Both the position numbers and the translations under genes were made by a program. A DNA stretch of 26,945 nucleotides from Macrostomum lignano (lineage: Eukaryota). Below the pieces are notes generated by a model that saw only the letters and a list, made by a program, of their open reading frames with translations, searched no databases and had not been told where the DNA came from. This document shows positions 2-25,813 of this stretch, piece by piece. The DNA is taken from the NCBI GenBank assembly GCA_002269645.1, contig NIVC01001321.1:1-26945 (forward strand), given 5' to 3'. Numbering within the stretch: the first letter of the stretch is position 1; the number at the start of each line of letters is the position of its first letter.

Positions 2-1648
2 TCAAAAGAGTTCAGTGACCTACACGGTTTTGAGTTCGCTGACGCCGCCCATTCGAACCATTCTGTGATAAATCATGAGAATCTAAAACTTATGCTCAAA
101 AGAATTTCCGAGCTTTATCAGGAACGCAGTTGCCGAAATTTTAGAAACGAAGTCTCTTTTAGTAAAGTCTCACGAAGCCTCTTCCGAACTAAACTGTGTG
201 ATGCAATCGCTTGAGAAAAGTGTGACTGTGTGCTTCAACGGACTGTAACAAGTCATGAGCAAAAGATCTCTGAGTTGGAAGAATTGACATCTTTGCAACA
301 AGGACAGATTTCAGAGTTTCGGTCTATACGAAGTGTTAACGAAAAAGTAATTTCTCAGCTTCAGGATGTAAATTCTTCCCTGTCAACTGATATTGGCGAA
401 TGCCGTCAGTCATTGCAAAATGCGATAGAAATTAAAGATCAGTTAGAACGCAAGGTAAGTAAGCTTCAGGATGAATGCAGTATTGCCACTCGAAAATATG
501 AAGAGTTGGTAGACACCAAACGCTTTCTTGAGGGAGAGCTACTAGCTGTTAAGAACTCTCAAGTATTGAGTGAAGAAAAACTAAATTTTGCCTCAAAGAC
601 GAATGAGGATCTTTCACATCAATTAAATAAAGCACTGAAGAAAGAGAACAACGTTACCATGAAATTTTGAACTGAAGAAGCAGAGCGAGGAGTATAACCG
701 TGATATAATTGAACTTCGCAATTCAAAAGCTGAGGCTGATAAAAAGTTGAAGAGTTACAAAGCATCGTTGTAGCTCAAAGAAAAGCTGCGTCTGAACTGC
801 AAGACACTAATTTCAAGCTAGAAAAGTCTGTTTCTGACTACGAAGAAATTTTGTATTCGCATGAGACTAACATTTTGTTGCTTCAGAAGACCAGCTTTTT
901 GCAGGAAGACTCGATCGCCAAGCTCAAAGAGTTGAATTCCGCACTGCGCAAGTCTATTGTGGAACTACAGGATGCTAACTCAAATATGGAAAAGCGGATA
1001 ATTGAGTTAGAAGAGGAAGAGCAGAGGATGCATTCGGAAATCGGATCATATCTGGAAAGAATATCCGAACTAGAATCGCAGGTCAGTGAAGAACAAATTA
1101 GCAGAGTGAATCAATTGCAAACTGCTAATACACAACTCACAGACGAGCTAAGCAAGCTAAAGGAAGAAAGGATGCATCTGAACCAAACTGTTGCTGATCT
1201 GGAATCAGAAAAGCTTAAACAACAGCAGGAAATAGAAGTGCGAGATGCGCAACTAATCCAACTCGAAGGTAATGCTGCGCATTATAAGGATGACCTCACA
1301 AAAGTATCGGACGAATTGGTCGAAGCGATGGCGTCAAAAGAGGAACTCGTAAAGGAAATCAGTACAATCGTACTCGCTAAGCAAGATTTTGAAACTCAGG
1401 TCTCTAAGCTGACACAGGAAAACTCAAATTTAGATGAGCAGAATAAAAAGCTTATTGTGGAACTGGAGCAGTCAGCAGAAGGATTTCGTTCTGCAAAGCA
1501 GGAGTTTGAGCGGTCAGTAAATGCATTAAAGTACGAATTAGAAACTCTGGAGAAATCAAACAGTTATCTGGATGGCCAGCTCCGGCAGTCCTCTGACAAG
1601 GCGTCAAATTTGGAATCCGAACTGCTATTGTTAGACAAGACCTATCAG
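2..1648 (+). CDS. Coding exon A (5'-truncated by window edge, frameshifted) of giant coiled-coil golgin-like gene
   Basis: ORFs 230-670 and 851-1663 are in the same frame and both are E/K/L/Q/S-rich coiled coil. They are bridged by a shifted frame at 669-770 (ELKKQSEEYNRDIIELRNSKAEADKKLKSY). Further frame switches occur near 125 and 230. The exon ends at CAG|GTACAA (donor 1649). Confidence 0.7.
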
Positions 1649-1840
1649 GTACAAGAATTATAATTTTGTATTTTTTCATACAGTTAATAAAAGCTTAAAT
1701 TATCACTTGCCTATCGTATAAAAAATTAAAAACAACAGAAAAATTTAGACTACGTACAGTACTCTCTCTTATTCATCGTTTTGCATTAAGTTAAATTACT
1801 GTCACTTGTCGTAACATAAGAATTTTTCTCTTCTTTTTAG
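1649..1840 (+). other. Intron 1 (192 nt, phase 0)
   Basis: GTACAA donor, AT-rich body with in-frame stops, acceptor tttttctcttctttttag|GAT GCG AAA restores the frame of ORF 1850-4123. Confidence 0.85.
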
Positions 1841-4081
1841 GATGCGAAAGTGGACCTATGTGTACAGCTCCAAAGAGCAAAAGAGGAACTACAGCAAACG
1901 CAAATAGAAAATGTGGACCTTCAAACCCGAGAAAGTGCTTCACTTGACAGTGTCAGCACTCTAACTAAAGAGCGTGACGACCTAGCCACTGAGTGCAATC
2001 TCGTAGCCTCAGAAGCTGCCCAGTTAAAAGAAGCCAACTCAGACTTAAATAACAGGCTTGAGGAGGTCTGCGCCGAGCGAGATCGCATGAAAGAAAAGTG
2101 CGCTCGACTTGTGAAGCAGTGCCGCATTTTGAAGGAAGCGTCCAAGCAGAGCCAACAACGAGCAGAGACTGCGGACATTTGCTGTCAGACTGACGAAACC
2201 ACTGAGTCAGAGGCTGCAGCTGGTACAGCATCTGCATCAGTATCAGATGCTGCAACTGAAACAGATGTAGTCATCTCTTCTGAGTCTTCATTTGAACCAG
2301 GAAGGTTGATGGTAGATGCTTGTACTGATGCAGAGCCATGTGAACTTGAAAGTCGAGTGTCTGAGCAAGATGTTGAGCAGTTATTATCGTCGAAGATGTC
2401 ACTGACTGAGGAAGTATTCAAGTTGAAGCAGCAGCTCGCAGCTTTGGAGTCATCGAAGCAAGCTGCGGATTCAGAGCTTGACAAAGCGATGACTGTCATG
2501 TCAGCTCACGAAAAGCTCGTTTCAGAACACGAAGTGTTAATATCGGAGCGGGATTCATTGATGTCGGAACGCGACGCATTGGTCACGGAGCGCGAAGCCA
2601 TTCTCTTCGATCGTGAAAATTTTTCATCAGAGCGGGATGCCTTGATAACAGAAAAGGAAGCTTTGGTGCTAGAGCGGAACACCTTGATAAGAGAACGGGA
2701 GACTTTGATATCAGAACGTGACTCCATGGCTACAGAGCGCGAGGCACTAGCCTCAGAGAACGCTCAGCTGATGGAATTCGCCACCCAGTTGAAGGAGAAG
2801 CATGACTCTGTCTGCACCGAGCGAGATCGCATGAAAGAAAAGTGCGCTCGACTCGTGAAACAGTGCCGCATTTTGAAGGAAGCATCCAAGCAGAGTCACC
2901 AGCAAACAGAAACTGCGGACATGTGCTGCCAGACTGAAGCCGCCACCGAGTCAGTGGCTGCAGCTGGTACATCATCTGCATCAGTATCAGACGCCGCAAC
3001 TGAAACAGTTATGATAATCTCTTCAGAGTCGTCATTTGAACCAGAAAGGATGATGGTAGATGCTTGTACTGATGCAGAGCCATGTGAACTTGAAAGTCGA
3101 GTGTCAGAGCAAGAGGTTGAGCATTTATTATTGTCCAAGATGTCTCTGACTGAGGAAGTCTTCGATTTAAAGCAGCAGCTTGCAGCTTTGGAGACATCAA
3201 AGCAAACTGCGGATTCAGAGCTTGAGAGAGCAATTAGTCTAATGTCCGAGCGGGACAGTTTAGCATCACAGTGCGATTCTGTAATATTGGAGCGCGACGC
3301 ACTAATTTCCGGACGTGAACGCCTGATCGCTGATCTTGAAAGCCTAGTATCCTCTCGTGATGCTCTGGTATTAGAGCGTGACTCTCTGGTAACAGAACGC
3401 GATACTCTAGTATCAGGACGTGCTTCCCTGGTAACAGAACTTGACTCTGTAACAACAGAGCGCGAAACACTAGCCTCAGAAAACGCCCAAATAATGGAAT
3501 CCGCCGCCCAGTTAAGGGAAAAGCATGACTCAGTGTGCACAGAGCGAGATCGGATGAAAGAAAAGTGCGCTCGACTCGTTAAACAGTGTCGCAATCTGAA
3601 GGAGGCTTCAAAGCAGAGTCAGCATCGAGCAGAGACCGCAGAATTCAGCTCTCAGACTGAACCGGACACCGTGTCTTTGGCTGCCGCGGGCGCTGTACTG
3701 ACATCTGATGGTGGACCAATGCCTTCAGTGACTCAAGTAAATGTATCCACAGAAACCGATCTACTGTTGCAGCCAGAAAGACCGTTGGTAGATGTTGCCG
3801 CTGATGACGAATGGACTGGTGCTCTTACTAAAAGTTCAAAGCGCGAGTTAGAGAGCTTGTTAGCATCAAAGATTTCCCTAGGAGAGGAGGTATCTGACTT
3901 GAAGAATCAACTCACCGAATCCGAGGCTGCTAGAAAGCTTGCAGAGTCTCAGCTGAAGAAATCATTGCAAAAACTACAAATAGTTGAGAATCTAGCGCAG
4001 CATGTGTCAAGTGGAGAGACACAGATTGAAGAGTTTCCGGAGTTGGAGACTGTGGTCAGCTCAGTTCGTGTCGCCCTACTT
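1841..4081 (+). CDS. Exon B of giant golgin-like gene (repeat units 1-3)
   Basis: Open frame, coiled-coil repeats, ends CTT|GTAAGT at 4082. Confidence 0.9.
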
Positions 4082-6650
4082 GTAAGTACTTCTTCCAAGT
4101 TTTGTACTCGTATATATTTTTAGCGATATTTCGGTTTTTATTTTATTGTTTTCTTCTCAATTTTTTAGAACACTCATTCCTCTAGGAGTCTTCAACAGTC
4201 AGAAATAGAACAGCTGCAATCAACGTTAAAAGGCTTGGAAAATATCCGGGACTCATTAACCAGCGAGCGCGACGCCTTGGCATCAGAACTACAAGCAATG
4301 GCGTCGCAACTTGAAGACATCGCAACTGAACGTGATTCGCTGAAGATGGATCGCAGCCTATTATCTTCTGAACGGGACACCTTGGCGTCAGAAAAAGTTC
4401 AGCTGATGGAATCTACCTCTCAAATAAAGGAGCAGCATGACGCGGTCTGCGCCGAGCGAGATCGCATGAAAGAAAAGTGCGCTCGACTCGTGAAACAGTG
4501 CCGCATTTTGAAGGAAGCATCCAAGCAGAGTCAACAACGCGCGGAGACTGCGGACATGTGCTGTCAGACTGAGACGACCACCGAATCAGTGGCTGCAGCT
4601 GGTACAGCATCTGCATCAGTATCAGATGCTAAAAATAAAACGAATATGATTATCTCTTCTGAGTCGTCATTCGAACCAGAAAGGATGATGGTAGACGCGT
4701 GTACTGATGCAGAGCCAAGTGGACTTGAAAGCCGAGTATCCGAGCAAGAGGTCGAACAGTTATTATCATCCAAGATGTCACTCACTGAGGAAGTATTCAA
4801 GTTGAAGCAGCAGCTCGCAGCTTTGGAGTCATCGAAGCAAGCTGCGGATTCAGAGCTTGACAAAGCGATGACTGTCATGTCAGCTCACGATAAGCTTGTT
4901 TCAGAACACGAAGTGTTACTATCGCAGCGTGATTCGTTGGTGTCGGAACGTGATGCATTGGTCACTGAGCGCGAAGCCATGCTCTCGGATTATGGAAATT
5001 TATCATCAGAGCGGGACGCCTTGATTAAAGAACGGGAGACTTTGGTATCAGAACGGAACGACTTTGCGTCAGAGCGTGACTCCATGGCTACAGAGCGCGA
5101 GGCATTAGCCTCAGAGAACGCTCAGCTGATGGAATCCGCCACCCAGTTGAAGGAGAAGCATGACTCAGTGTGCACCGAGCGAGATCGCATGAAAGAAAAG
5201 TGCGCTCGACTCGTGAAACAGTGCCGCATTTTGAAGGAAGCATCCAAGCAGAGTCAACAACGCGCGGAGACTGCAGACATTTGCTGTCAGACTGAGACGA
5301 CCACCGAATCAGTGGCTGCAGCTGGTACAGCATCAGCATCAGTATCAGATGCTAAAAATAAAACGAATATGATTATCTCTTCTGAGTCGTCATTCGAACC
5401 AGAAAGGATGATGGTAGACGCGTGTACTGATGCAGAGCCAAGTGGACTTGAAGGTCGAGTGTCCGAGCAAGAGATTGAGCAGTTATTATCATCCAAGGTG
5501 TCACTGACTGAGGAAGTCTTCGAGTTGAAACAGCAGCTCGCAGCTTTGGAGTCATCGAAGCAAGCTGTGGATTCAGAGCTCGACAAAGCAATGACTGTCA
5601 TGTCAGCTCATGAAAATCTCGTTTCAGACCGAGACAATTTACTGTCTGAACGGGAGAAGCTTGTCTCAATGTACAATAGTTTACTGTTAGAGCGTGACAC
5701 GTTGATTAAAGAGCGCTCAGCTACGATCTCTGAGCTTGAAAACCTAGTATTAGAACGAAACGCTCTGGTTTCGGAACGTGACACGCTTGCGTTAGAGCGG
5801 AATACTTTAGCTTCAGAGAACGCTGCTCTGATGGAATCTGCCACCCAGTTGAAGGAAAAGCATGACGCAGTCTGTACTGAGCAAGATCGCATGAAAGAAA
5901 AGTGCGCTCGACTTGTGAAGCAGTGCCGCATTTTGAAGGAAGCATCCAAGCAGAGTCATCAGCGAGCAGAGACTGCGGACATTGGCTGTCAGATTGAAAC
6001 AGCCACTGAGTCAGTAACTGCAGCTAGTGCGACAGCTACATCAGATGCTGCAACTGAAACAGATGTCATCTCTTCCGACTCTTTATTCGAACCAGTAAGG
6101 GTGATGGTTGATGCTAGTACTGATGTGGAATTCAATGAAGTTCACAGTCGAGTGTCCGAACAAGAAGTTGAGCAGTTATTGTTCTCTAAGATGGCACTGA
6201 CTGAAGAAGTATTCGAGTTAAAACAACAACTCGCAGCTTCAGAAGCATCCAGAGAAGCGACAGATTCTGAACTTGCTAAAGTAAAGGTTCTAAACTCAGA
6301 TCGAGAGGATTCAGTTTTAGATCGAGACACTTTGGTATTAGAGCGAGATTCGTTGTTAACCCAACGGGACAGCATACTTTTAGAGCGAGACACTTTGATT
6401 GCAGAGCGAGAGTCAATGCTTTCCGATCGGGAAAATTTAGTCGCAGAGCGGGACGCTTTAGCCTCTGAGAACGCTGCTCTAATGGAATCTTCTACCCAGT
6501 TGAAAGTGACGCATGAGGAAGTCAGCACCGAGCGAGATCGCATGAAAGAAAAATTTGCCCGGCTTGTAAAACAGTGCCGAATTCTGAAAGAGGCAGCCAG
6601 GCAGAGTCAGCAGCGAGCAGAGACTGCGGAATGCAGCTGTCAGACCGAAC
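2063..6650 (+). repeat. Coding macro-repeat: 7 copies of a ~650-745 bp unit containing nested 21-bp heptad repeats
   Basis: The anchor gagcgagatcgcatgaaagaaaa (ERDRMKEK, minor variants) starts at 2075, 2819, 3542, 4454, 5177, 5879 and 6530. Spacings are 744, 723, 912 (includes intron 2), 723, 702 and 651 nt. Confidence 0.95.
4082..4168 (+). other. Intron 2 (87 nt, phase 0)
   Basis: GTAAGT donor, T-rich body, acceptor ttttttag|AAC ACT CAT in frame with ORF 4235-7471. The alternative AG at 4185 is out of frame. Confidence 0.85.
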
Positions 6651-6940
6651 CAGAAAGGGAGTCAGCGACTCTATCTGACGCAAACACCGCTTCAAATGCT
6701 AGGCCGGACGTTTCAGTTGCCGATGCATCAACAGAAACGGTTGCACTTTTACCTCCCGAGGCTTCATTCGAAAAAGAGAACCCGACAATTTCTGAGTCTC
6801 AGACCGTTGAAGTTTTCTATCGCGCTTTTGACGATGCTATTAGAGCTGCTGGACTTTCATACCGCGAAGTGAGTCTCCCATCTCCGCCCTCGTTGTTGTC
6901 AATGTCCGAGCTTTCAGAATGGATTACTAACCTTGTTAGC
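4169..6940 (+). CDS. Exon C of giant golgin-like gene (repeat units 4-7)
   Basis: Open frame, same repeat family as exon B, ends AGC|GTAAGT at 6941. Confidence 0.9.
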
Positions 6941-7030
6941 GTAAGTTTCAATGAGTTTTCATTTTTTGTACTGAAATTTCTTCACTTAATACTGCAATTT
7001 TATGAAATTTTTGTCATTATTCTAATACAG
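6941..7030 (+). other. Intron 3 (90 nt, phase 0, no in-frame stop)
   Basis: GTAAGT donor, T-rich body, ctaatacag|TGC acceptor. The ORF track reads through it as an atypical hydrophobic stretch. Confidence 0.8.
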
Positions 7031-7450
7031 TGCGTGGCCAGTCAGCATCAACAGTTGGTAAATACTGGCGAGCGCTGCGAAGGCTTGGAGCAGACTATCG
7101 CCGAGAAAGAGGAGTCCCTAACTGAGATGATGGAGCGCCTTGAGATAGCCAACAAGCGAGCGATTACCACAGGCTCCGCCAGTTGGATTTCCAGCCGTCC
7201 TGCCACCTCGGTTGCCAGCCGTCAAGTTGAATGCGACCTTACTCAGCCGCTTATTGATGAGCTGGAGGCGACGCTGGCTAAACGCGACGGCAAAATTGCC
7301 GCTATGGAGCGGGACAGTCGCGAACTCAACCGGAAGCTGGAGTCCCATCTGCAAACTATGCGTCGAATGGAAGCTCGACTCCAGGCTTCGAGTCGAATGC
7401 TGCGCACTAGGCTGGTTGATAGCGCCGAGGCTGAGCAACTGGCGGTTGAG
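7031..7450 (+). CDS. Exon D of giant golgin-like gene
   Basis: Coiled-coil sequence (LEQTIAEKEESLTEMMERLE...). Probable donor GAG|GTTGGT at 7451, with an in-frame stop 18 nt later. Confidence 0.8.
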
Positions 7451-8419
7451 GTTGGTGCAGTGCTTTTGTAGGGGTTTGTAAAAACGGTGCTCACCTAACA
7501 CTAGAAAAATTTCGGAAAGCTTGGAAAAACTGCTATAGCAGCATTCCAACGAAGCTCTCTACGTTCGTACATTGTAAAAGAGGATGTCAACTTTTGCGGC
7601 GAAGTAAAGCTCTGGACCCAACCAACTACATTTTTTATAACTTTTCGGATCAATTAACAACTTGTAAAGAAACGCCAAGGCATCTCATCTGGTTCGCTCC
7701 TTTGTGCTCCCAGGGTTTGTTGGTCCAGAGCTTTACTTTCGACTCCATTCGGGTGCTCAAGTTGACATCAACTATCTGTTTATTGACGTTTGTAATTGAT
7801 ACGTCGTAGAAACGTCACAAATCTATTAATTGGGGGATTTAGCTTAGTGGTTAGAGCGTCGGACTCACGACTTAAAGGTCGGGGGTTCGATTCCCGATCT
7901 CACTGGAACAATTTGTGCTCTTGAGCAAGACGCTTAACTCTGCATTGCTTCAGTTCACCCAGCTGTAAAATGGGTGCCAGCATTAGCTGGGGTAATTGAG
8001 GCTGTGTGGCGACCCCCCCCCCCCAGTCCTTGGGCTGAACAGCCGTACGCAGCCTTCAGATGCGCCGCACAATAGCTGCGGCTGAGCTGTCGGTTGTATA
8101 TCTTCCCAATCGGGGTAGGTGTAATCAGTTATTATTATTATTATTATTATTATCATCATCATTATTATCATTATCATCATCGTCATGATTATCATTATCA
8201 TTAATAAATGATAGAACCGCTTACTGCTTACTGTTTTACGATATGAAAGATCCAGTTTGTTAAATTTCTAATTAATGAAGTTAAGCAGTGCTTTTACATT
8301 CTGAAAGTTCTAGTTTCTGAAGCGATCTCACCCCAATGCCATCCAGCTGTCTTTAGCTCTTTCTTAACCTTATTATACACAATAAATCATATTGAAAAGG
8401 CCTCTTCAATCAATTCCAG
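7451..8419 (+). other. Intron 4 (969 nt, phase 0) containing a SINE
   Basis: GTTGGT donor and caattccag|GTG acceptor join AEQLAVE to VESLFAQLDAAEEE in frame. The donor is weak, so the exact 5' boundary is less certain. Confidence 0.7.
7832..8202 (+). mobile_element. tRNA-derived SINE with CORE-like central domain and (ATT/ATC)n tail
   Basis: A box TAGCTTAGTGG (7840-7850) and B box GGTTCGATTCC (7884-7894). The segment cttgagcaagacgcttaactctgcattgcttcagttcacccagctgtaaaatggg (about 7920-7974) resembles the MIR/CORE consensus. Trinucleotide tail at 8129-8202. Confidence 0.8.
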
Positions 8420-11400
8420 GTGGAGTCTTTGTTCGCGCAGCTCGACGCAGCCGAAGAAGAGGTTGGCCAGCTGCGCTTGACCCTGCGGGACCGGGACAAT
8501 GAGCTGCTCCGGCTAGCCGACCAGCTGCGCGTCGAATCCGAGGCCAAGCGGCTCGACCTGTCAACTATGCGCGAGCAGTCCCGTCTGTACGAGGCGGAGG
8601 TGCGTCGCCTACGTTTTGAATTGGACGCCAAAGAGGAAATGCTGACGCTGACTCGCGAGGCCGCCACCACCGCCACCCCCGCAGCCGCCGCGTCCACTTC
8701 GTCGGGTTGCGGCAGAGAGGACACGGCGGGGGATGGGGAGCTGGACAATAGTGCCGCATTTTATAAGCGCCGTACGGACGAACTCACTGTTGAACTCAAC
8801 AATGCTAGAAATTCTATTCAGCGGCTGACTGGCGAGTTAAAGGAAAATTCTATTGCGGCTGAAGCTGCCGTTGAAAAACTGCGCGCCGAGCTGTCGGTCA
8901 CCGTTGAAAGCAAAGAGTTACTAAACAGAGAATTAATTGAAGCCAAAACTGCTTGCGACAGTTTGACTATTGAAATAGCCGAAGCCAAAGAAGATGGAAG
9001 CATTATAGAAAAGCTTAACTCAGAATTGGCAACGGCCTCAGATGACAAAGAGTTGTTGAACAAAGAGCTGTTTGAAGCTAAAGCTACAATTGACAATCTG
9101 ACGGCTGAATTAGCTAAAACAAAGACTGAAATCGAGCTTGTGGGTGATTCTAATTCAAAACTGACCAATGCCATCAGAGACAAAGAGTTACTAAGCGAAG
9201 AATTGAGTAAAGCTAAAGCTACAATTGACAATTTGACCGCTGAATTGGCTAAAACAAAGACTGAACTCGAGCTTGTGGGTGATTCTAATTCAAAACTGAC
9301 CAATGCCATCAGAGACAAAGAGTTACTAAGCGAAGAATTGAGTAAAGCTAAAGCTACAAATGACAATTTGACTGCTGAATTGGCTAAAACAAAGACTGAA
9401 CTCGAGCTTGTGGGTGATTCTAATTCAAAACTGACCAATGCCATCAGAGACAAAGAGTTACTAAGCGAAGAATTGAGTAAAGCTAAAGCTACAATTGACA
9501 ATTTGACTGCTGAATTGGCTAAAACAAAGACCAAAGTGGACGGCGATGCTAGTGAAGCGCTGGGCAATTTAAACTCTGAATTGACGGTCGCTTTAGAAGA
9601 AAAAGAAAAAGAACTAAGCGAGACAAAAGTTCTAATAGACAATTTGACGGCCGAATTGACCAAAGCCAAAGAAGACATGGTTATTGAATCTACAGAAACT
9701 AGAAGCATCATTGAACAACTTGCAAAGGACAAGGAAAATTTAAATCAACAACTAACTGCGGCTAACAATGGAATTGACAGTTTAAACATCGAATTTGTCA
9801 GGACTAAGGAGGATTTGAATAATAGACTGGCTGAAGCTGAATGCACGATCGATAATCTGCGCTCTGAGCTGGCCAGTGCGGCTACCGCTAATGATAATTT
9901 ATGCAACGAATTGGCAGAAGCTAAAATATTAATCGATGAGCTGAGAAATGAGCAAAAAGAAGTTGAAAAACCTACTTTGGCTACTGTAAGTTGCGCCAGC
10001 CAGACTGAAGCGGTCCCGGAAGCTGCAGGTCTCGAACAGCAGCGACTGTATGGCGCTGGTCAGGACACCGCCGATGGTGAAAGCGAAGCCAGTCTGCGCA
10101 GTCGTTTGGCTGAGAAAGAGCGCCTGGAGCAGCGCTACGCCGCTCTGGTAAAGAAGCTCCGACAGCAGCGACAGGAGACACTGCAGCAGCACCGTAATCA
10201 GCTGGCTGAAGTTCAGTCAGCAGCCGCTGCTGAGGTGGACGAGCTGCGTCGACGATTGGAAGCCAGCGAAGCTGAGCTCGATTCGGCACGGATGTCCCTG
10301 GCTTTAGCACCGCCACCGCCGCCACCTCCGCCGCCTCCGCCTCAGCAGCAGGCAGCCGAATCGGAGCTGCAGTCTCTGCGTGCTGTGCACTCGCGATGCC
10401 AAGGACAGCTGGACCAGGTTCGAGCCGAGCGCAATCGAATTCAACAGGAGTTCGACAGGCTGCGGCGGCGGCTAGAAGAGAGGCCTTTGTCGTCAACTCC
10501 GCCACCACCGCCTTCGCAGCCGATCGAGCGCTTACAGCAGTCTTCATCTCCGACGCCGTCACCGCCGCCCCTGCATGCTCCAACAGCTGAAGCATCGGCG
10601 GTTGATGCCGCTGCGGCTGCAGCAGCCGAGGATGAAGTTCTAACACTGCGCTCCGAGAACGAAGGCTTGCGCTTTAAAGTGAGCGTGCTAGAGACCAAAG
10701 CCAAGAAGATGGAGTTCCGACTTAGGGCTGAACGCGACAAGATTGACAAGCTGCAGCTGCGGCTCGACGAGAAAGACGTGGAACTGGACCAGCTGGTTGA
10801 CAAGCTTCGCGCCAGCCGGGGCCAGCTCGAATCTGAGCGCAGTCGACACCTCAACGAAGCCAAACGGCTCAGCGCAGCGCTTGAGGCTGAAGAGGCTCGG
10901 GCCGGCAAGCTCGAGCGTCGACTACGCGACGGCAGCTCCGAGTCGGCGACGGCCGCCCTCGCCGAGGAGGCGGCTGCGGCTCGCGAAGCAAAACGCCAAT
11001 CGGAGCAGCGCCTGCTAGCGGAGGCGGCCGATCTGCGCGGCCAGCTGGACGAACTGGCGGCTGACAATCGCGATTTGCGCAGCCGACTTGAAGCGGCCGC
11101 CCCGTCTGGCTCTGGCGCCTCCGCCGGGGTCAGCGCGAGCGACTGTGCCGAGTGTAGGCGTCTGCGCGAGGCTGTCCGAGTGCTGGAGCTTCAACAGGCC
11201 TCGAGACGTAGCAGGCAGCCAACTTGCGAGACCAAGTCTGTTGGCACCGAGGCGGTGTCAGTTGATGAGGCTGCCTGTCAGACATTGGAACCTGACGAAG
11301 AGAATGATGCAATGCAGCGGCGATTAAACGAGCTAGAGTTGGCGGCTGTGGAGTGCGAGTCGCTTCGGGCTCTGGTGAAGCAGATGGAGGAGTCTGCGGC

Positions 11401-11716
11401 GCCTTGTGCTCCAACGCCGACACCGCAGCCGCTGCGACCGTCGCCGTCGCCGCCACCTCCAGACTCGGAGGACACTTTGTCGGCGTCTCAATCAGCTTTG
11501 GACGAGTCATCAGTGCTGATTCCAATGCTGATGGACGAGCAGCAGGCCCTCGCGGGCTTACAATCGACAACAACACCAACGATGGCGTTGGTTCGACGAC
11601 TTCGTCGATGCCTTCAACCGTGGCGATCGTTGAGGCTTCGGCCGAGCGCGCGCAACGCCGTCATCGCATATTTGTTTGGCCTGCACTGCCTGTTGCTGTA
11701 CTGGTTGCTGCTCTGA
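8420..11716 (+). CDS. Terminal exon E: coiled coil with Pro-rich hinges and C-terminal transmembrane tail anchor (giantin/golgin-84/CASP-like)
   Basis: 1098-codon ORF ending LRLRPSARNAVIAYLFGLHCLLLYWLLL-stop. The Tyr (11669) and His (11684) are spaced Y-x4-H, as in the TMDs of tail-anchored golgins (recalled: golgin-84 IYMALLH, giantin IYFLMIH, CASP FYTLFLH). Confidence 0.85.
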   Translation: MESLFAQLDAAEEEVGQLRLTLRDRDNELLRLADQLRVESEAKRLDLSTMREQSRLYEAEVRRLRFELDAKEEMLTLTREAATTATPAAAASTSSGCGREDTAGDGELDNSAAFYKRRTDELTVELNNARNSIQRLTGELKENSIAAEAAVEKLRAELSVTVESKELLNRELIEAKTACDSLTIEIAEAKEDGSIIEKLNSELATASDDKELLNKELFEAKATIDNLTAELAKTKTEIELVGDSNSKLTNAIRDKELLSEELSKAKATIDNLTAELAKTKTELELVGDSNSKLTNAIRDKELLSEELSKAKATNDNLTAELAKTKTELELVGDSNSKLTNAIRDKELLSEELSKAKATIDNLTAELAKTKTKVDGDASEALGNLNSELTVALEEKEKELSETKVLIDNLTAELTKAKEDMVIESTETRSIIEQLAKDKENLNQQLTAANNGIDSLNIEFVRTKEDLNNRLAEAECTIDNLRSELASAATANDNLCNELAEAKILIDELRNEQKEVEKPTLATVSCASQTEAVPEAAGLEQQRLYGAGQDTADGESEASLRSRLAEKERLEQRYAALVKKLRQQRQETLQQHRNQLAEVQSAAAAEVDELRRRLEASEAELDSARMSLALAPPPPPPPPPPPQQQAAESELQSLRAVHSRCQGQLDQVRAERNRIQQEFDRLRRRLEERPLSSTPPPPPSQPIERLQQSSSPTPSPPPLHAPTAEASAVDAAAAAAAEDEVLTLRSENEGLRFKVSVLETKAKKMEFRLRAERDKIDKLQLRLDEKDVELDQLVDKLRASRGQLESERSRHLNEAKRLSAALEAEEARAGKLERRLRDGSSESATAALAEEAAAAREAKRQSEQRLLAEAADLRGQLDELAADNRDLRSRLEAAAPSGSGASAGVSASDCAECRRLREAVRVLELQQASRRSRQPTCETKSVGTEAVSVDEAACQTLEPDEENDAMQRRLNELELAAVECESLRALVKQMEESAAPCAPTPTPQPLRPSPSPPPPDSEDTLSASQSALDESSVLIPMLMDEQQALAGLQSTTTPTMALVRRLRRCLQPWRSLRLRPSARNAVIAYLFGLHCLLLYWLLL
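9077..9531 (+). repeat. Near-perfect 135-bp (45-aa) coding tandem repeat, ~3.4 copies
   Basis: gctaaagctacaa begins at 9077, 9212, 9347 and 9482. Unit AKATIDNLTAELAKTKTELELVGDSNSKLTNAIRDKELLSEELSK. Degenerate copies flank it. Confidence 0.95.
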
Positions 11717-13276: not shown

Positions 13277-16093
13277 ATGCACCATCTAGCTCACTGCGAC
13301 CACAGTGCATCGCAGGCTAGCCGACCTATGTCGCCGAGCACGCAGTTGAAGTTTCTGCTGGCCTGGGGCCAGGGACGCAACTCCCAAGAAAGCCCGTCCC
13401 CGCTCAGCAGTGGTCATAGGCTCCGCTCGAAGCTGTCAAACAACGCTCAGCTGGACGGATCGGCTTCTTCAAATCCTAGGCCGAGTGGTCGACGAAGGCG
13501 GTCACTGACCTATGTTCCGGTGTCCGCCTGGGTCAAAGACTTCAAGGATGAAGACGAGATCGACGGGTGCAGCATGAGGACGGCAGGAAGCCGCAGATCA
13601 CCGAGTACCGGAAGATTTTCAGCCGCGTCAAGGAGCGCCTCCATTGGTGACCGGATAACATCAGTTTCGTCCAGGCAGTCGGTTGCCATGCCGCATGAGC
13701 CGACGGAGTCGCCGGCGCCTCCGCTTCCGCCGCCTCGAGCGTCACGCGCGTCGCGGCCGGCTGAACGGAGTCCGCCACCGCCGCTTCCGCCCCGACGGGC
13801 ACCCCGGCCGGCTCCTCGGAAAACTCTACCACCGCTGCCGCCTCGGAAAAAGCTGCCACCGCCGCCGCCACCGGAGCAGTTGCTTTCGCCCCCGATGCCG
13901 TCTCAGACTCCGCCACCGACGCCACCTCCAAAGACTCTGACACCGCCACCGCCGGCGCGCGTTGCGTCTTCTTCTGCTAAAGCCTCTGTTGCAGCTGTTG
14001 CTGTCACCAGCCAACGCCACCGCACGAATCGCCATTCTTCAACACTATCTCAGGCTGAGCTACGGGAGGTTCTGGCTCGCAGTGCAAGTCGCGCTGAAGC
14101 CTATCAGTCCATCGCAGATGCAGCTCCATCTGCCGGTGCCTCGATAGCAGAGTGCTCTAGAAAACGCCGCGAGCTTCGGCGGCCGTCAGACGTAGCAACT
14201 CTACTACACGAGATACTCGCTGGTAGAGCAAGCCGCTTAGGTGCCGGGGAAACTTTAGAAGTCGCCTCGCCAGCCGCGGGCGCGGCTAGCGCTAAAACAA
14301 ATAAATCAACTCACGGCTCTGGGGCTGGTCGAGCTCTTAAAAATGAGGACGATTTAAACAAGCAACGAAAAAAGTGGTACAAGAAGTCGACAAAGTCGCG
14401 CAGCTACTCCTCTGAATCGAACATAGTGGACACGCTGGCGGAGATCATTGCTGAGAAGATCAGTCGCGCCGATAGGCGCAGGCAGAAGTATGACAGCAAA
14501 GGTGACGAACGCCTTAAGTTTGCAGCATCTTCGTCCAATCATCACAAAGACAAGCCAGATTGCGTTCCTGGGACCGAAAGAAAAGTTGTTAAAGTTAAAC
14601 GGCATAGTAAGCGAACCAGCACTGCCACAGATAGTTCGCTTAGTAGGCAGCAGCAAAACTGCAACAACTGCTATGAAAAGCCACCAAGAAGAAAAACAAG
14701 GCAGTTCTGTCACACTCACGTTGTGAATATTCAGTCAGCTAATGGTGTTCACAGTCGAAGTGGCGATGGTTGGAATTTTGCGTCCAAATATGGAAGCCAA
14801 GAACTTTTCCGTAAATGTGGGCTTTCAAATAGATCGAATGCAGGAAACTACAGACCATGTGATCAGCTCTTCTTTGATGGCAGTTTTGAGCAAGCGCAGA
14901 TTCGTGCAACTGCAACGCCAGTATCTGAGCGCAGCCTGTCTGAGCGATTCAGCGTTGAACGAATTCAAGGCGAGTTAGTCTATCAAAATGTCGATAATAT
15001 CGGCACTAGCACTTGTTCAACAGATGAGGAAATTAGCAGCGAACAACGTCCAACCAATGTGTCTCAGCTGAGCACGCAAGCGTTGTATCATCACCGGTTC
15101 AGCGGTGCTGAAATCTCTTCGTTCTCGCGTTCAAGCGATTCATCGCAACGGTCAATGTCAGAAGCTCAAGCGAACTCGCACTTAGCTCCAACTGGTTGCC
15201 AGCATTCTAAGGCTGTCACAGAGCGGTTGTCCCGGCGTGAAAACTCGGATTTCGAATCTCAAGCTGCTGCAGCCGCGGCGGCTGCGGCGGCCTATGCGGA
15301 AGATTTATTCAGCGGCGTGGTTAACGGACGCGATGAGTCCAATCTTCTGCTTCCGTTGGATGAGGCACCTCACGAGTTAAGGCTAAATTGGGTGTTGGCA
15401 GACACTGGGGACGAGTTGGGAGGAGGCGACTGTGTTGACATAGAAGCAACGATTCACATCCTTGAGCCGGAGACTGCATTGCCAAGGACCAATAGACGTG
15501 AACGGAGCCCGGTGTTTTGCGCCAGTCAGACTTGCAATTGGAGTTCCGATCTGCCGAACAACTGTCGAAGTGACGTTGCTGCTGATACATTGCAGCATTC
15601 TCAAACGCGCAGCTCAATATCGTCCGATGCGTTGCAGGAAAAATTTCGCTTACCGTCAACATTGCATGGTCAGCAGCAAAATGTCTCAGACTGGCTAACC
15701 ACTGGTTGCGAAGGTTTCAATCGAGTAGCGAAAAGCGTTAATAAAAAGCGGACTACACTGCATCGACGTAGTCGAGTTCAAATTGTGGAGCCTCTTGCTG
15801 ACGCTGTGCAGCATAAGATTGAGCTTCCCAGTTGTATTTTTGAGCAAATTTTCTGTTCTTGGAGACCATTAAAACATGCGCAACTGTTTAGACAAAGCTT
15901 GGCATTCGTCAGTCTAGAGAAAATGCTGCCCGACTCAGCGAGTGAATCTGCAAGTCTCTTGACTCATTTTGGCGGATTGCTGATCAGGGCAGACAATCGA
16001 ATCCCAGCCGAGCCAGAGAGAAAATCAGCACTAATAGAGCTATCGCATTTCGATTTGCCAGATGCATCAGCTCCCGCATTGTCAAGAGATTAA
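13277..16093 (+). CDS. Intronless 938-aa low-complexity protein with Pro-rich SH3-ligand cluster and basic NLS-like segments; function unknown
   Basis: 2.8-kb ORF with ATG in aaaacATG context. It contains PPLPPPR, PPLPPRR and PPLPPRKK, a basic stretch KQRKKWYKK and a poly-Ala tract. No recognisable folded domain. Confidence 0.75.
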   Translation: MHHLAHCDHSASQASRPMSPSTQLKFLLAWGQGRNSQESPSPLSSGHRLRSKLSNNAQLDGSASSNPRPSGRRRRSLTYVPVSAWVKDFKDEDEIDGCSMRTAGSRRSPSTGRFSAASRSASIGDRITSVSSRQSVAMPHEPTESPAPPLPPPRASRASRPAERSPPPPLPPRRAPRPAPRKTLPPLPPRKKLPPPPPPEQLLSPPMPSQTPPPTPPPKTLTPPPPARVASSSAKASVAAVAVTSQRHRTNRHSSTLSQAELREVLARSASRAEAYQSIADAAPSAGASIAECSRKRRELRRPSDVATLLHEILAGRASRLGAGETLEVASPAAGAASAKTNKSTHGSGAGRALKNEDDLNKQRKKWYKKSTKSRSYSSESNIVDTLAEIIAEKISRADRRRQKYDSKGDERLKFAASSSNHHKDKPDCVPGTERKVVKVKRHSKRTSTATDSSLSRQQQNCNNCYEKPPRRKTRQFCHTHVVNIQSANGVHSRSGDGWNFASKYGSQELFRKCGLSNRSNAGNYRPCDQLFFDGSFEQAQIRATATPVSERSLSERFSVERIQGELVYQNVDNIGTSTCSTDEEISSEQRPTNVSQLSTQALYHHRFSGAEISSFSRSSDSSQRSMSEAQANSHLAPTGCQHSKAVTERLSRRENSDFESQAAAAAAAAAAYAEDLFSGVVNGRDESNLLLPLDEAPHELRLNWVLADTGDELGGGDCVDIEATIHILEPETALPRTNRRERSPVFCASQTCNWSSDLPNNCRSDVAADTLQHSQTRSSISSDALQEKFRLPSTLHGQQQNVSDWLTTGCEGFNRVAKSVNKKRTTLHRRSRVQIVEPLADAVQHKIELPSCIFEQIFCSWRPLKHAQLFRQSLAFVSLEKMLPDSASESASLLTHFGGLLIRADNRIPAEPERKSALIELSHFDLPDASAPALSRD

Positions 16094-16155
16094 TAGTAAG
16101 CTGCTGCCTACTGGGTTCGACTCTTGAACTGGCAGGTGGACATCTGAATCTATCT

Positions 16156-17127
16156 ATGCTGAATACCACGCAGCACCCAGAAGCAGCAATCGTCAGGTCA
16201 AGCCTCTGTTTGCATCAGCGATGCGGCAACAGACAGAAATTGTTTAATTCGGGCGTCGAGCAGACCTGGCCGCCCTGTTGCTTCTACAGGACCGAGTCCT
16301 GTCGAGGCTCAACAGCCCGTCGAGGCCGAAGCAATGAGCTTCTTGAGAAGCTGCAAGTAGCTTCCAATCTGGCTATACAAAGCCGGCGACAGAGCGATCG
16401 ATTCAGCAATGACTTAGATGAACAAGCAATAGAATTCAATAACTGTGACGTCACTCCTCTGACATCTATCGGTGCAACTGATTGTGCAAAGTGTCTAAAA
16501 CCAATCGAAGCATCGCTGACCGAGAAATGTAAACGATTATCCTCAAAGTACTGCAGCTTACAATGCGTCATCACACACTGTCCAGAGCTGGTCACCAATC
16601 TAAACTTGCACCTGGCCTCCGATACCGAAGCCTCGAAGAAAGATTCGAAAACGCTGCAGCGTGAGCCACCGCAACAGCCGTACTTCTCAAATCAGGAAAC
16701 GGCATCGAGTGAGAGCAGCAGCACCGATACCAGCTTGCGCACCCTCGGCAACCAGTTCAATCAGGTGAGCGATACGTGCAGAAAGCTGCTACTGTCCCAG
16801 GCGGCTGGCGACAAGCTGGCATCATCTAGCGCGGATCAGCTGCTTTCTCTCCAGTCCATCCAGACTGCAGACTCGGATCCGCGGGTCGAACAGGCTAACG
16901 AAGGCGTAAGAAGCTCGCCGCTCGATGCCCGATCCTGCAGCTCTCGAAGTTGCCCGTCTAGCAGCAATGCACGGTGCTTCGGCTCGCCTTATCTGTCGGA
17001 ACTCGAGCAGGAAGTGCCTCCTCTGGTCAGCATCACTTGCCAGCTCAGCTTAGTGGAGCAAACGACTAGCGATGCTGATACCAGTGACAGTTTTGAACAT
17101 TCTTTACCGGCTGGCGACTGCGCATAG
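16156..17127 (+). CDS. 323-aa ORF with FCS/TRASH/MYND-like Cys cluster; possibly the C-terminus of the 13277 gene
   Basis: The frame is open from 15946 and overlaps the end of the upstream ORF. It contains CAKC-x18-YCSLQC-x3-HC at 16483-16581. Confidence 0.55.
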   Translation: MLNTTQHPEAAIVRSSLCLHQRCGNRQKLFNSGVEQTWPPCCFYRTESCRGSTARRGRSNELLEKLQVASNLAIQSRRQSDRFSNDLDEQAIEFNNCDVTPLTSIGATDCAKCLKPIEASLTEKCKRLSSKYCSLQCVITHCPELVTNLNLHLASDTEASKKDSKTLQREPPQQPYFSNQETASSESSSTDTSLRTLGNQFNQVSDTCRKLLLSQAAGDKLASSSADQLLSLQSIQTADSDPRVEQANEGVRSSPLDARSCSSRSCPSSSNARCFGSPYLSELEQEVPPLVSITCQLSLVEQTTSDADTSDSFEHSLPAGDCA

Positions 17128-24413: not shown

Positions 24414-25326
24414 ATTGTTTTTGATGAGAAAATGTGATTTAGATTGGTTCTAGAAATATAGCCAGCCAGCTGCCTGGCCTATTTAAAAACAAAAGTAAAA
24501 CTTTTATTTTAATCTTTCAACTTGTATTTGAAAGGCAACTGTGTTGCTAGTTAAGCTTAGAGCTCAAGGAGTTAAAGGGGGCCTAAAAATAAAGTTTAAA
24601 TGACAGTATCCTATTTTAATATTATATAATTCTCATTATATATATAGAATATATCATATAAATACATTATATAAATATTTACACTGTATTAAATGATTTT
24701 TAGGTTAAAGGTTTTCAATTTATTAGACCTACAAGCTGTTGAAACCCGCGGATTTTGAACCCGGGGAATTCTAATCTCCGGAACTACTTTTGCATGTATT
24801 CTGAAATCTAAGGCCATACACAAACAAATTAATAGTAGGGTAGAGGTAGACGTAAAATGGAGCACATTCGTGTAAAATTAGGGTTTGAGGCAAACGTTGA
24901 TATTGTTGGCTGGGGTACTGCACAGAATGTCAGGCAATGTCTGTCTGACTCTAAAACATATATTGCTAAACTCTGGTCTCTCCCTGACTCTCCCTATGTC
25001 CCTTGGATCCTTTAAAATTTCTATTGTCTCTTTGTTTCCTTTCTTCTCTCTCATCCCTCGTCTCTCCTCTCTCTTCTCTCCTCTCTCCTCTCTCCTCTCT
25101 TCTCTTGTATCTTCCCTCATCTCTCTTCCCTATTCTTTTCTCTCTCCTCTCCTCTCTCCTTTCTACTTTTCGTTTTCTCTCTGCTCTTCTCTCTCCTCTC
25201 TACTCTTTCGTTTTCTCCCTCCTCTCCTCTCTCCTCTCTCCCCCTGTTCTCTCGTCTCTTCCCTCACATCTTTCCTCTCTCTCTTTCCACTCATCTCTTT
25301 TCTTGTTTTATATCTTCTCTCTCATA

Positions 25327-25614: not shown

Positions 25615-25740
25615 TATGTTCTCTCTCCCCTCGTCGCCCGTCTCTTCCCTCACCTCTCTTCTCTCTCATCTGCTCTTTCATCTCTCCTTTCTCTTCTTTT
25701 ATCTTTTCTCTCTTATCTCTTCTCGTTTCTATCTGCTCTG

Positions 25741-25813
<73 letters not shown>

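What the first reader, a model, noticed from the sequence alone, without database searches (positions are those of the whole stretch)
2..11716. Giant (>3400 aa) tail-anchored golgin in an apparently invertebrate genome
Splicing four phase-0 introns joins the large ORFs into one coiled-coil protein ending in a single TMD with no luminal tail and the Y-x4-H motif preceded by LRxxPxAR. That motif is typical of golgin-84, CASP and giantin. Golgin-84 and CASP are far shorter, and only giantin reaches this size. As I recall, giantin lacks a clear ortholog in Drosophila and C. elegans. This could be an unrecognised giantin ortholog or a convergent giant golgin built by repeat expansion.
Basis: partly seen in the sequence, partly recalled or inferred. 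Interest (0 to 1): 0.75.

Follow-up and report, generated by a model that had tools for sequence, protein, structure and literature searches.

The report
Giant tail-anchored golgin of a flatworm
The window holds the 3' 11.7 kb of a gene of the flatworm Macrostomum lignano that encodes a very long (at least 3,211 residues) coiled-coil protein. It ends in a membrane anchor of the same type as the Golgi proteins giantin, golgin-84 and CASP. It grew giant by duplicating a 240-residue module, and it cannot be shown to be a true giantin.

Summary
The observation largely holds. Window 2-11716 (+ strand, one frame) is a five-exon gene with four canonical phase-0 GT-AG introns. It encodes a coiled-coil protein whose only hydrophobic segment is its last 19-20 residues, with the stop codon directly after. 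The anchor carries Y-x4-H, preceded by LRLRPSAR.

One claim fails. Bases 2-742 are not an open frame: they need four single-base frame corrections. So 3,211 aa are intact and about 3,458 aa is conditional.

The window is the first 26,945 nt of contig NIVC01001321.1 of Macrostomum lignano (Mlig_3_7). The N-terminus is therefore cut off, and the frameshifts sit at a PacBio contig edge.

The only detectable relatives are flatworm proteins (Schistosoma, Rodentolepis, one transcript). They share a ~170-aa coiled-coil block and the same terminal Y-x4-H anchor, but are only 640-930 aa long.

The anchor matches giantin, golgin-84 and CASP anchors well above shuffled controls. It does not discriminate among the three, and nothing outside the anchor matches any of them.

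The giant size comes from six diverged ~240-aa modules (a 183-aa helix plus a 60-aa disordered hinge) and a recent 45-aa tandem repeat.

Verdict: a new flatworm member of the transmembrane-anchored rim golgins, giant by lineage-specific expansion. Giantin orthology is unproven.

The parts
2..742 (+). 5' coding stretch at the contig edge. It reads as coiled coil but has four frame switches (about 120, about 230 in GTGTGTG, about 665 in AAATTTT, about 765) and in-frame stops at 212 and 668.
   Evidence: The window starts at base 1 of contig NIVC01001321.1.
743..1648 (+). Intact part of exon A (302 aa), a unique coiled coil.
1649..1840 (+). Intron 1: phase 0, GTACAA..TTTTTAG, 25% GC.
1841..4081 (+). 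Exon B (747 aa).
4082..4168 (+). Intron 2: phase 0, GTAAGT..TTTTTTAG, 25% GC.
4169..6940 (+). Exon C (924 aa).
2078..6532 (+). Six repeat modules: 2078-2821, 2822-3544, 3545-4456 (spans intron 2), 4457-5179, 5180-5881, 5882-6532. Each has the conserved head ERDRMKEKCARLVKQCRILKEASKQSQQRAETAD, an acidic Ser/Thr-rich disordered hinge of about 60 aa, and a long helix containing (S/T)ERDxLx heptads. A degenerate seventh head starts at 6533.
   Evidence: 55-89% nt identity. AF2: 183-aa helix at pLDDT >90 plus a 60-aa linker at pLDDT <50 per module.
6941..7030 (+). Intron 3: phase 0, GTAAGT..ATACAG, 23% GC, open in frame.
   Evidence: Needed for the length of the annotated 1591-aa product.
7031..7450 (+). 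Exon D (140 aa).
7451..8419 (+). Intron 4: phase 0, GTTGGT..TTCCAG (an alternative donor lies at 7460). It holds a tRNA-derived SINE-like insert (head at 7834-7902) and an (ATT/ATC)n microsatellite at 8124-8203.
8420..11716 (+). Exon E (1,098 aa plus TGA).
9075..9531 (+). Recent in-frame tandem repeat: 135 nt (45 aa), 3.4 copies, 97% identity.
   Evidence: The public 1591-aa product is shorter than the genome predicts by exactly two units.
10664..11212 (+). Coiled-coil block conserved across the flatworm family (QLxxRLDxxxxELDxxVDxxRHHR ... LRGQLxExxxDxRxLRxQL ... CxxC(K/R)(R/K)LxxxxxxL(E/Q)).
   Evidence: AF2 helices.
11630..11653 (+). Basic juxtamembrane motif LRLRPSAR (LRxxPxAR). Its spacing to the Tyr is the same as LRRYPIAR in human golgin-84. 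Only a P-(R/K) is kept in the other family members.
11654..11713 (+). C-terminal transmembrane anchor NAVIAYLFGLHCLLLYWLLL. The invariant Tyr and His (Y-x4-H) lie at 11669-11686. The stop codon follows directly.
   Evidence: AF2 TM helix at pLDDT 85-93.

Best explanation
This is the 3' part of a Macrostomum lignano gene for a tail-anchored golgin. The protein is a very long, segmented coiled-coil rod held in the membrane by a single C-terminal helix of the Tyr/His type, which is otherwise known only from golgin-84, CASP and giantin.

By analogy with those three proteins, the following steps are inferred and not shown. The protein is inserted post-translationally into the ER by the TRC40/GET route. 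It leaves the ER and stays at Golgi cisternal rims in a way that depends on the anchor's Tyr. It then projects a rod of roughly 300-400 nm into the cytoplasm, where it captures vesicles or organises cisternae.

It belongs to a family detectable only in flatworms. That family is defined by a ~170-aa coiled-coil block located 150-300 residues before the anchor, plus the anchor itself. The neodermatan members are 640-930 aa.

The Macrostomum protein became giant within its own lineage. It duplicated a ~240-aa module (a 183-aa helix plus a 60-aa acidic hinge) to six copies and, more recently, a 45-aa unit to 3.4 copies.

Whether the family descends from giantin, from golgin-84, or is an independent offshoot that shares the anchor cannot be decided from sequence.
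For: Shown:
- Gene model and single terminal TMD.
- Source organism.
- The RNA-seq-based public annotation joins exons C, D and E. Its 1591-aa product at 5612-11716 equals 443 + 140 + 1098 - 90 aa.
- An exhaustive HMMER search of 1.84 billion representatives found only four hits. All with a source name are flatworm proteins, and the complete ones end in the same Y-x4-H anchor with no tail.
- Y and H are invariant in the family.
- Anchor profile against giantin anchors: score 30.9, Prob 83%, E 9e-6, and 0 of 150 column shuffles reach it (maximum 21.4).
- The only Pfam family touched by the last 50 aa is the TMD end of CASP_C (13 bits, E 0.055).
- AF2 gives long confident helices, disordered hinges and a terminal TM helix.
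- Modules differ by 11-45% at DNA level, with about equal counts of synonymous and amino-acid-changing codon differences. They are therefore neither an assembly duplication artefact nor free of constraint.

From the literature:
- The TMDs of the three golgins share similarity and a functionally required Tyr (PMC5840792).
- They share a His at the same TMD position and bind TRC40 (PMC6633398).
Against: - No localisation data exist.
- The link to known golgins rests on about 25 residues of a hydrophobic helix.
- Pfam Golgin_A5 and CASP_C are not matched at their thresholds.
- No cytoplasmic similarity to giantin, golgin-84 or CASP was found.
- The N-terminus, which carries the vesicle-capture motifs in golgins, is missing.
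- The 5' 740 nt carry four frame breaks, so this copy could be damaged.
- Repeat copy number in a PacBio assembly of a neopolyploid genome is uncertain.
- The homology searches were shallow (2-5 sequence profiles), and two of the three word-indexed searches were saturated at 8,000 candidates.
Confidence: 0.6

Rival explanations
1. It is the true flatworm orthologue of vertebrate giantin (GOLGB1). Giantin would then date back at least to the bilaterian ancestor and have been lost or diverged beyond recognition in flies and nematodes.
For: - Size class of more than 3,200 aa.
- The anchor lies at the very C-terminus, as in giantin: 14 residues after the Tyr here against 16 in giantin. In the memory-typed, Pfam-validated human sequences the Tyr is followed by 27 residues in golgin-84 and about 55 in CASP.
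- The family anchor profile scores best against giantin: 30.9 against the giantin profile and 24.8-28.2 against single giantin tails, compared with 23.8 for golgin-84 and 18.6 for CASP.
Against: - Nothing beyond the anchor aligns (Prob 38.8%, carried by the TMD).
- No giantin was among the hits of the exhaustive search.
- Other members of the same family are 640-930 aa, so large size is derived in Macrostomum and not ancestral.
- The window's own tail, hand-aligned on the Tyr, is closer to golgin-84 (13/28 identical) than to giantin (10/27).
- The margin over golgin-84 is small, and the comparison rests on single sequences for golgin-84 and CASP.
Confidence: 0.15
2. It is a strongly diverged golgin-84 (GOLGA5) orthologue of flatworms, secondarily expanded in Macrostomum.
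For: - UniRef names the Rodentolepis nana member 'Golgin-84'.
- The neodermatan members have golgin-84-like sizes.
- The window's juxtamembrane LRLRPSAR has the same spacing to the Tyr as LRRYPIAR of human golgin-84.
- hhalign of the anchor against the golgin-84 tail scores 23.8, E 4e-4.
Against: - Pfam Golgin_A5, which recognises golgin-84 broadly and scored 497 bits on the human sequence, does not match any family member even at E <= 1-10.
- There is no luminal tail.
- The LRxxPxAR motif is not conserved in the other family members.
- The same UniRef name is also given to a giantin C-terminal fragment (P0014), so the name seems keyed to the shared anchor.
- I could not test whether flatworms also have a separate, Pfam-positive golgin-84.
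Confidence: 0.15
3. It is a tail-anchored coiled-coil protein of another membrane (ER, nuclear envelope, or a flatworm-specific structure), and the Tyr/His anchor is convergent.
For: - No cytoplasmic homology to any golgin was found.
- The similarity is confined to a short hydrophobic helix.
Against: - A His inside a TMD is unusual, and together with the Tyr five residues upstream it is the hallmark of the three golgins.
- The match is order-specific, at roughly 7 SD above column shuffles.
- Y and H are invariant across flatworm members that are otherwise only about 25-30% identical.
Confidence: 0.07
4. The giant ORF is partly an artefact. It could be a decaying homeologue of a neopolyploid genome, or a misassembled repeat region, so that no such protein is made.
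For: - Four frame breaks occur in the first 770 nt.
- The public annotation has only partial products, of 578 and 1591 aa.
- The annotated product lacks two of the 135-nt units.
Against: - About 9.6 kb of coding sequence downstream is free of stops in one frame.
- The frame breaks sit at the very edge of a PacBio contig and in short repeats or homopolymers.
- Modules differ by at least 11% at DNA level, so they are not a collapsed or duplicated assembly error, and they show constraint.
- The annotation is RNA-seq derived and joins exons C, D and E.
Confidence: 0.05

Closest known systems
Giantin (GOLGB1, vertebrates)
   Same: - Giant size (3,259 aa in human, from general knowledge).
- A rod of coiled coils broken by hinges.
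- A single anchor at the extreme C-terminus with Y-x4-H and essentially no luminal tail.
- The best profile match of the anchor.
   Different: - No detectable similarity outside the anchor.
- The juxtamembrane motif differs: Pro at -6 from the Tyr in giantin, against P at -9 and AR at -7/-6 here.
- The length here comes from six recognisable 240-aa modules.
- Relatives in the same family are small.
- Published work treats giantin as chordate-specific.
Golgin-84 (GOLGA5; Pfam PF09787 Golgin_A5)
   Same: - Tail-anchored rim golgin with Y-x4-H.
- LRxxPxAR before the anchor, with identical spacing to the window's motif.
- Similar size to the neodermatan family members.
- UniRef gives the R. nana member this name.
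   Different: - Golgin_A5 is not matched by any family member.
- Golgin-84 has a short luminal tail.
- The window protein is more than four times longer.
CASP (CUX1 alternative product; Pfam PF08172 CASP_C)
   Same: - Anchor with AR at -7/-6, Y-x4-H and the same 'LHCL'.
- The only Pfam family touched by the last 50 aa (model positions 225-245 of 252).
   Different: - 13 bits against a cut-off of 28, and only the window's tail hits it (1 of 5 members).
- CASP has a luminal tail of about 40-55 aa.
- No similarity in the coiled coil.
Flatworm hypothetical proteins: S. mekongi KAK4471762.1, S. turkestanicum CAH8497908.1, S. mansoni Smp_106410, R. nana VDN97416.1
   Same: True homologues. They share the ~170-aa coiled-coil block and, in the complete models, the terminal Y-x4-H anchor.
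   Different: - They are 640-930 aa long and lack the repeat modules.
- Only window residues 2878-3044 and the anchor align.
- None has been characterised.

Membership tests
Transmembrane-anchored rim golgins (golgin-84/CASP/giantin anchor class) | A single TMD at the C-terminus (tail-anchored) and no other hydrophobic segment. | tested here: met
   Kyte-Doolittle scan: the last 19 aa score 2.15 and the next best segment 1.0, with the stop directly after. AF2 gives a terminal helix at pLDDT 85-93.
Transmembrane-anchored rim golgins (golgin-84/CASP/giantin anchor class) | A conserved Tyr and a His five residues later inside the TMD. | tested here: met
   YLFGLH at 11669-11686. Y and H are invariant in 5 of 5 family members and 7 of 7 giantin tails. 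Literature.
Transmembrane-anchored rim golgins (golgin-84/CASP/giantin anchor class) | Order-specific sequence similarity of the anchor to known members. | tested here: met
   hhalign score 30.9, Prob 83%, against giantin tails. Column shuffles gave 11.5 +/- 2.7, maximum 21.4, with 0 of 150 reaching 30.9. Golgin-84 scored 23.8 and CASP 18.6.
Transmembrane-anchored rim golgins (golgin-84/CASP/giantin anchor class) | A long cytoplasmic coiled coil. | tested here: met
   AF2 gives helices of 183 aa at pLDDT >90, separated by 60-aa disordered hinges. Composition is E 13.6, L 12.2, A 11.4, P 2.2 and G 1.8%. Oligomeric state was not tested.
Transmembrane-anchored rim golgins (golgin-84/CASP/giantin anchor class) | Golgi localisation. 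| not testable with these tools
   Needs imaging of the tagged C-terminal fragment.
Giantin (GOLGB1) orthologue | Sequence similarity to giantin outside the TMD (reciprocal detectability). | tested here: not met
   An exhaustive profile search returned no giantin. hhalign of 360 aa against 294 aa gave Prob 38.8%, carried by the TMD only.
Giantin (GOLGB1) orthologue | An anchor at the extreme C-terminus with almost no luminal residues. | tested here: met
   14 residues follow the Tyr here, against 16 in seven giantin tails.
Giantin (GOLGB1) orthologue | Length above 3,000 aa as a family trait. | tested here: inconclusive
   The window protein is at least 3,211 aa, but its neodermatan family members are 640-930 aa, with no large hidden coding ORFs in the R. 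nana locus.
Giantin (GOLGB1) orthologue | N-terminal p115/Rab-binding region. | not testable with these tools
   The N-terminus lies beyond the contig end.
Golgin-84 (Pfam PF09787 Golgin_A5) | A match to Golgin_A5 at or above 31.7 bits. | tested here: not met
   No hit even at E <= 1-10 for the window exons, tails, P0001, P0002, P0003, P0004 or P0006. The positive control, human golgin-84, scored 497 bits.
CASP (Pfam PF08172 CASP_C) | A match to CASP_C at or above 28 bits. | tested here: not met
   11-13 bits over the TMD end of the model only, and only for the window's own tail. The positive control, human CASP, scored 191 bits.

The most novel reading that the evidence does not exclude
The flatworm family is the protostome counterpart of giantin. 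In that reading, a tail-anchored golgin with a tail-less Tyr/His anchor existed in the bilaterian ancestor, and giantin is not a chordate invention. Its length would be evolutionarily plastic, with ~240-aa helix-plus-hinge modules added or lost by lineage. Macrostomum, which can be made transgenic, would then offer a non-vertebrate model for testing what the length of giantin is for.
Probability: 0.15. Interest if true: 0.65.

Novelty: new member of a known kind. Interest (0 to 1): 0.42.

Why it matters
Golgins anchored by a transmembrane helix are few: golgin-84, CASP and giantin. Giantin, the only giant one, is currently held to be a chordate invention (PMC5840792).

A flatworm-restricted family with the same unusual Tyr/His anchor would be a fourth lineage of this class. 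One member of it reached giantin size on its own by module duplication.

That would show that very long rim tethers can evolve repeatedly from short ones. The modular build (a 183-aa helix plus a 60-aa hinge, six times) offers a natural length series for testing how tether length and hinge number affect vesicle capture or cisternal organisation.

Macrostomum lignano has stable transgenesis (PMC5730564), so the localisation and truncation tests are feasible.

On the practical side, the public annotation splits the gene into partial products of 578 and 1591 aa. The family members are labelled 'hypothetical' or, probably wrongly, 'Golgin-84'.

Tried and rejected
- Pfam on all exons and on the downstream ORFs gave only sub-threshold generic coiled-coil hits. 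Pfam on the 50-100-aa tails gave only CASP_C at 11-13 bits.
- ARAGORN and Rfam at gathering thresholds found nothing.
- The search for homologous proteins with the last 398 aa and with the five-sequence block alignment was saturated at 8,000 low-complexity candidates. It returned only one hit and four hits, so family breadth is under-sampled.
They came back at up to 91% identity and named golgin subfamily B member 1. Only the retrieved database sequences were used for the giantin comparisons.
They were accepted as yardsticks only after Pfam recognised them (E 2.7e-149 and 3.6e-56). They remain single sequences, so comparisons with them are weaker than with the giantin profile.
- Long-range hhalign of the family against giantin, golgin-84 and CASP found nothing beyond the TMD.
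- I considered whether the ERDxL heptads of the modules echo the 'SLQNDRDR/EERDxL' motifs of giantin. I rejected this as evidence, because such motifs are common in coiled coils and were not supported by hhalign.
- An intron reading of the gaps at 212 and 668-742 was rejected. There are no plausible splice sites, and the 'gap' sequence reads as coiled coil in frame 3.
The splice support instead rests on the gene ranges and lengths returned with a permitted look-up.
- The supplements of the genome paper and a literature search for GOLGB1 in Macrostomum gave nothing.
Full report
**Source and setting**

An exact look-up of the downstream ORF 13277-16093 places the window at positions 1-26,945 of contig NIVC01001321.1 (314,524 bp) of assembly GCA_002269645.1. 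That accession is the Mlig_3_7_DV1 assembly of the free-living flatworm Macrostomum lignano (PMC11641670). It was built with Canu from PacBio reads, polished with Pilon and annotated from RNA-seq transcripts (PMC5730564).

The window begins at a contig end, so the 5' end of the gene is physically absent.

**Checking the observation**

All long + strand reading frames between 2 and 11716 are in one frame. Four introns have canonical ends and are all phase 0:

| Intron | Coordinates | Ends |
|---|---|---|
| 1 | 1649-1840 | GTACAA..TTTTTAG |
| 2 | 4082-4168 | GTAAGT..TTTTTTAG |
| 3 | 6941-7030 | GTAAGT..ATACAG |
| 4 | 7451-8419 | GTTGGT..TTCCAG |

- The three short introns are 23-25% GC, against 42-57% in the exons.
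- Splicing gives 3,211 aa without a stop from 743 to 11713.
- The public annotation contains a 1591-aa product spanning 5612-11716. This equals 443 (5612-6940) + 140 (7031-7450) + 1098 (8420-11713) - 90 aa.
- Introns 3 and 4 are therefore spliced in an RNA-seq-derived model, and exons C, D and E belong to one transcript.
- The missing 90 aa are exactly two units of the 135-nt tandem repeat.
- A second partial product of 578 aa ends at 3886. This fits 2153-3886 in the same frame.
- The single giant ORF is thus not recognised in the public annotation.

**What fails**

Bases 2-742 are not one ORF. Frame 2 has stops at 212-214, at 668-670 and at several more positions up to 742. The coiled-coil-like reading jumps to frame 3 between about 120-230 and about 665-765.

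The switch points lie in or next to short repeats (GTGTGTG, AAATTTT). There are four breaks in 770 nt at the very edge of a PacBio contig, and none in the following 9.6 kb of coding sequence. Poor consensus at the contig end is the likeliest cause, but decay of this copy cannot be excluded. The figure '>3400 aa' (3,458 from base 2) is therefore conditional, and 3,211 aa are solid.

**Anatomy of the protein**

- The only hydrophobic segment is the last 19 aa (AVIAYLFGLHCLLLYWLLL, Kyte-Doolittle 2.15; the next best is 1.0), and the stop follows at once.
- Y-x4-H is at 11669-11686 and LRLRPSAR at 11630-11653.
- The body contains six modules of 217-275 aa (starts at 2078, 2822, 3545, 4457, 5180 and 5882) and a degenerate seventh.
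- AlphaFold2 on two modules gives, per module, one uninterrupted 183-residue helix at pLDDT >90 and a ~60-residue acidic Ser/Thr-rich linker at pLDDT <50.
- Modules are 55-89% identical at DNA level. Synonymous and amino-acid-changing codon differences occur in about equal numbers. The modules are therefore old enough not to be an assembly artefact, and they evolve under constraint.
- Exon E carries a younger 45-aa repeat of 3.4 copies at 97% identity.
- AF2 of the last 331 aa shows helices over the conserved block, a disordered stretch, a basic juxtamembrane helix and a confident terminal TM helix.

**Relatives**

A profile of the last ~330 aa plus its one close hit was searched exhaustively against 1.84 billion representative proteins. 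The close hit was P0001, a transcript fragment from SRR28338165, 49% identical over the coiled coil. Only four proteins reached E <= 1e-3:

- P0001;
- Rodentolepis nana VDN97416.1 (642 aa);
- Schistosoma turkestanicum CAH8497925.1 (466 aa), whose cluster mate CAH8497908.1 is 692 aa;
- Schistosoma mekongi KAK4471762.1 (934 aa) (names).

A search with the coiled-coil block alone added S. mansoni Smp_106410 and further Schistosoma fragments.

P0001 and the three neodermatan models that reach the C-terminus (P0002, P0004, P0006) end in the same kind of anchor with nothing after it:
- ...ILYMCILHLLLANCLLQ*
- ...LIYFCFIHLLLLHCWLF*
- ...VIYFFSVHLLLLHCWLS*
- ...IAYLCAVHLGLLYCLLA*

Y and H are invariant.

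The family core is a ~170-aa block (window 10664-11212), with QLxxRLDxxxxELDxxVDxxRHHR, LRGQLxExxxDxRxLRxQL and CxxC(K/R)(R/K)LxxxxxxL(E/Q), plus the anchor. Nothing else of the window protein aligns to the neodermatan proteins.

The R. nana locus has no large unannotated coding ORFs between its exons. Those members are genuinely small. Gigantism is a Macrostomum-lineage trait caused by the repeats.

**Comparison with the known anchored golgins**

The literature states the following:
- The TMDs of golgin-84, CASP and giantin resemble each other and carry a Tyr needed for ER exit (PMC5840792 citing Gillingham 2002).
- All three have an unusual His at the same TMD position and bind TRC40 (PMC6633398).
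- Giantin is 'specific to chordates', with no homologue in Drosophila.

I retrieved real giantin C-terminal fragments. I used Pfam-validated human golgin-84 and CASP C-terminal halves as yardsticks.

| Comparison (hhalign) | Score | Prob / E |
|---|---|---|
| Family tails (5 seq) vs giantin tails (7 seq), 24-26 columns over the anchor | 30.9 | 83%, E 9e-6 |
| Family tails vs 150 column-shuffled giantin tails | 11.5 +/- 2.7, max 21.4 | none reach 30.9 |
| Family tails vs single giantin tails | 24.8-28.2 | 49-73% |
| Family tails vs golgin-84 tail | 23.8 | 35% |
| Family tails vs CASP tail | 18.6 | 5% |
| Giantin vs golgin-84 | 17.1 | - |
| Giantin vs CASP | 16.0 | - |
| Golgin-84 vs CASP | 24.3 | - |

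The flatworm anchor therefore sits inside this anchor class as firmly as the three known members sit with each other. It cannot be assigned to one of them.

- Giantin is slightly favoured by the family profile and by the absence of a luminal tail: 14 residues after the Tyr here, 16 in giantin.
- Golgin-84 and CASP are favoured by the window's own juxtamembrane motif, with P at -9 and AR at -7/-6 from the Tyr, as in LRRYPIAR and KMAR. That motif is not conserved in the rest of the family.
- Outside the anchor there is no similarity to any of the three.
- Golgin_A5 and CASP_C are not matched at threshold. The best result is CASP_C at 13 bits, on the TMD only.
- The UniRef name 'Golgin-84' for the R. 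nana protein is not strong evidence. The same name is attached to a giantin C-terminal fragment of Myodes glareolus.

**Mechanism**

Shown: a single terminal Tyr/His TMD, a very long helical body with regular disordered hinges, and a conserved coiled-coil block about 150 residues upstream of the anchor.

Inferred by analogy with golgin-84, CASP and giantin:
- post-translational insertion through TRC40/GET;
- Tyr-dependent ER exit and retention at cisternal rims;
- a cytoplasmic rod of roughly 300-400 nm (about 2,400 helical residues at about 0.15 nm each), whose missing N-terminus would capture vesicles or bind Rabs.

The conserved block is a candidate for the 'cytoplasmic localisation domain' described for golgin-84 and giantin within about 100 residues of the TMD. 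That link is speculation.

**Verdict**

The gene is a new, uncharacterised flatworm member of the transmembrane-anchored golgin class, not a demonstrable giantin orthologue.

It is of moderate interest. It adds a lineage to a very small protein class and gives an independent example of a giantin-sized tether in a transgenic-capable animal. The functional claim still rests on about 25 residues and on analogy.

Noticed in passing
window 7834-8203 (inside intron 4): A tRNA-derived SINE-like insert. Its tRNA-like head at 7834-7902 matches Rfam tRNA over the full model at 21.4 bits, E 0.046, below the gathering score, and ARAGORN calls nothing. It is followed by a conserved-looking core, a C-run near 8012-8025 and an (ATT/ATC)n microsatellite at 8124-8203.
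   Followed up: partly
window 13277-17127, + strand: The next gene downstream. The 938-aa ORF at 13277-16093 is an annotated product in GCA_002269645.1. It is Pro/Ser-rich, looks largely disordered and has no Pfam family. A further 323-aa ORF (16156-17127) follows in another frame, and its relation to the first is unknown.
   Followed up: partly
window 25037-26645: A long CT-rich, strongly strand-skewed low-complexity region (GC skew about -0.6) made of degenerate TC/TCCTCTC/CTCTACTC arrays, including an 87-nt unit of 2.3 copies at 92% identity. The long '+ strand ORFs' there are artefacts of this composition.
   Followed up: no
window 2153-3886 and 5612-11716: The public annotation of Mlig_3_7 splits the golgin into partial products of 578 aa and 1591 aa. 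The latter is exactly two 135-nt repeat units (90 aa) shorter than the genome sequence. This suggests collapsed repeats in the transcript assembly or a copy-number difference.
   Followed up: partly
P0002 (R. nana A0A158QH61) and P0014 (Myodes glareolus): UniRef names both a flatworm family member and a giantin C-terminal fragment 'Golgin-84', although Pfam Golgin_A5 found nothing in P0002 (P0014 was not scanned). The automatic name appears to be triggered by the shared Tyr/His anchor.
   Followed up: partly
window 8420-11713 (exon E): Sharp swings of composition within one exon: 65% GC (GC3 0.77) at its start, 39% in the tandem-repeat part (9020-9900) and 59-69% in the last 1.5 kb. The exon also has Pro and Ala runs.
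   Followed up: no
L003 (S. mekongi CM068307.1), genes MN116_005160 and MN116_005161: A 171-aa product (P0041) repeats part of the sequence of the neighbouring 934-aa family member (P0004) but lies on the opposite strand, 1.8 kb upstream. It may be a local partial duplication or an annotation artefact.
   Followed up: no
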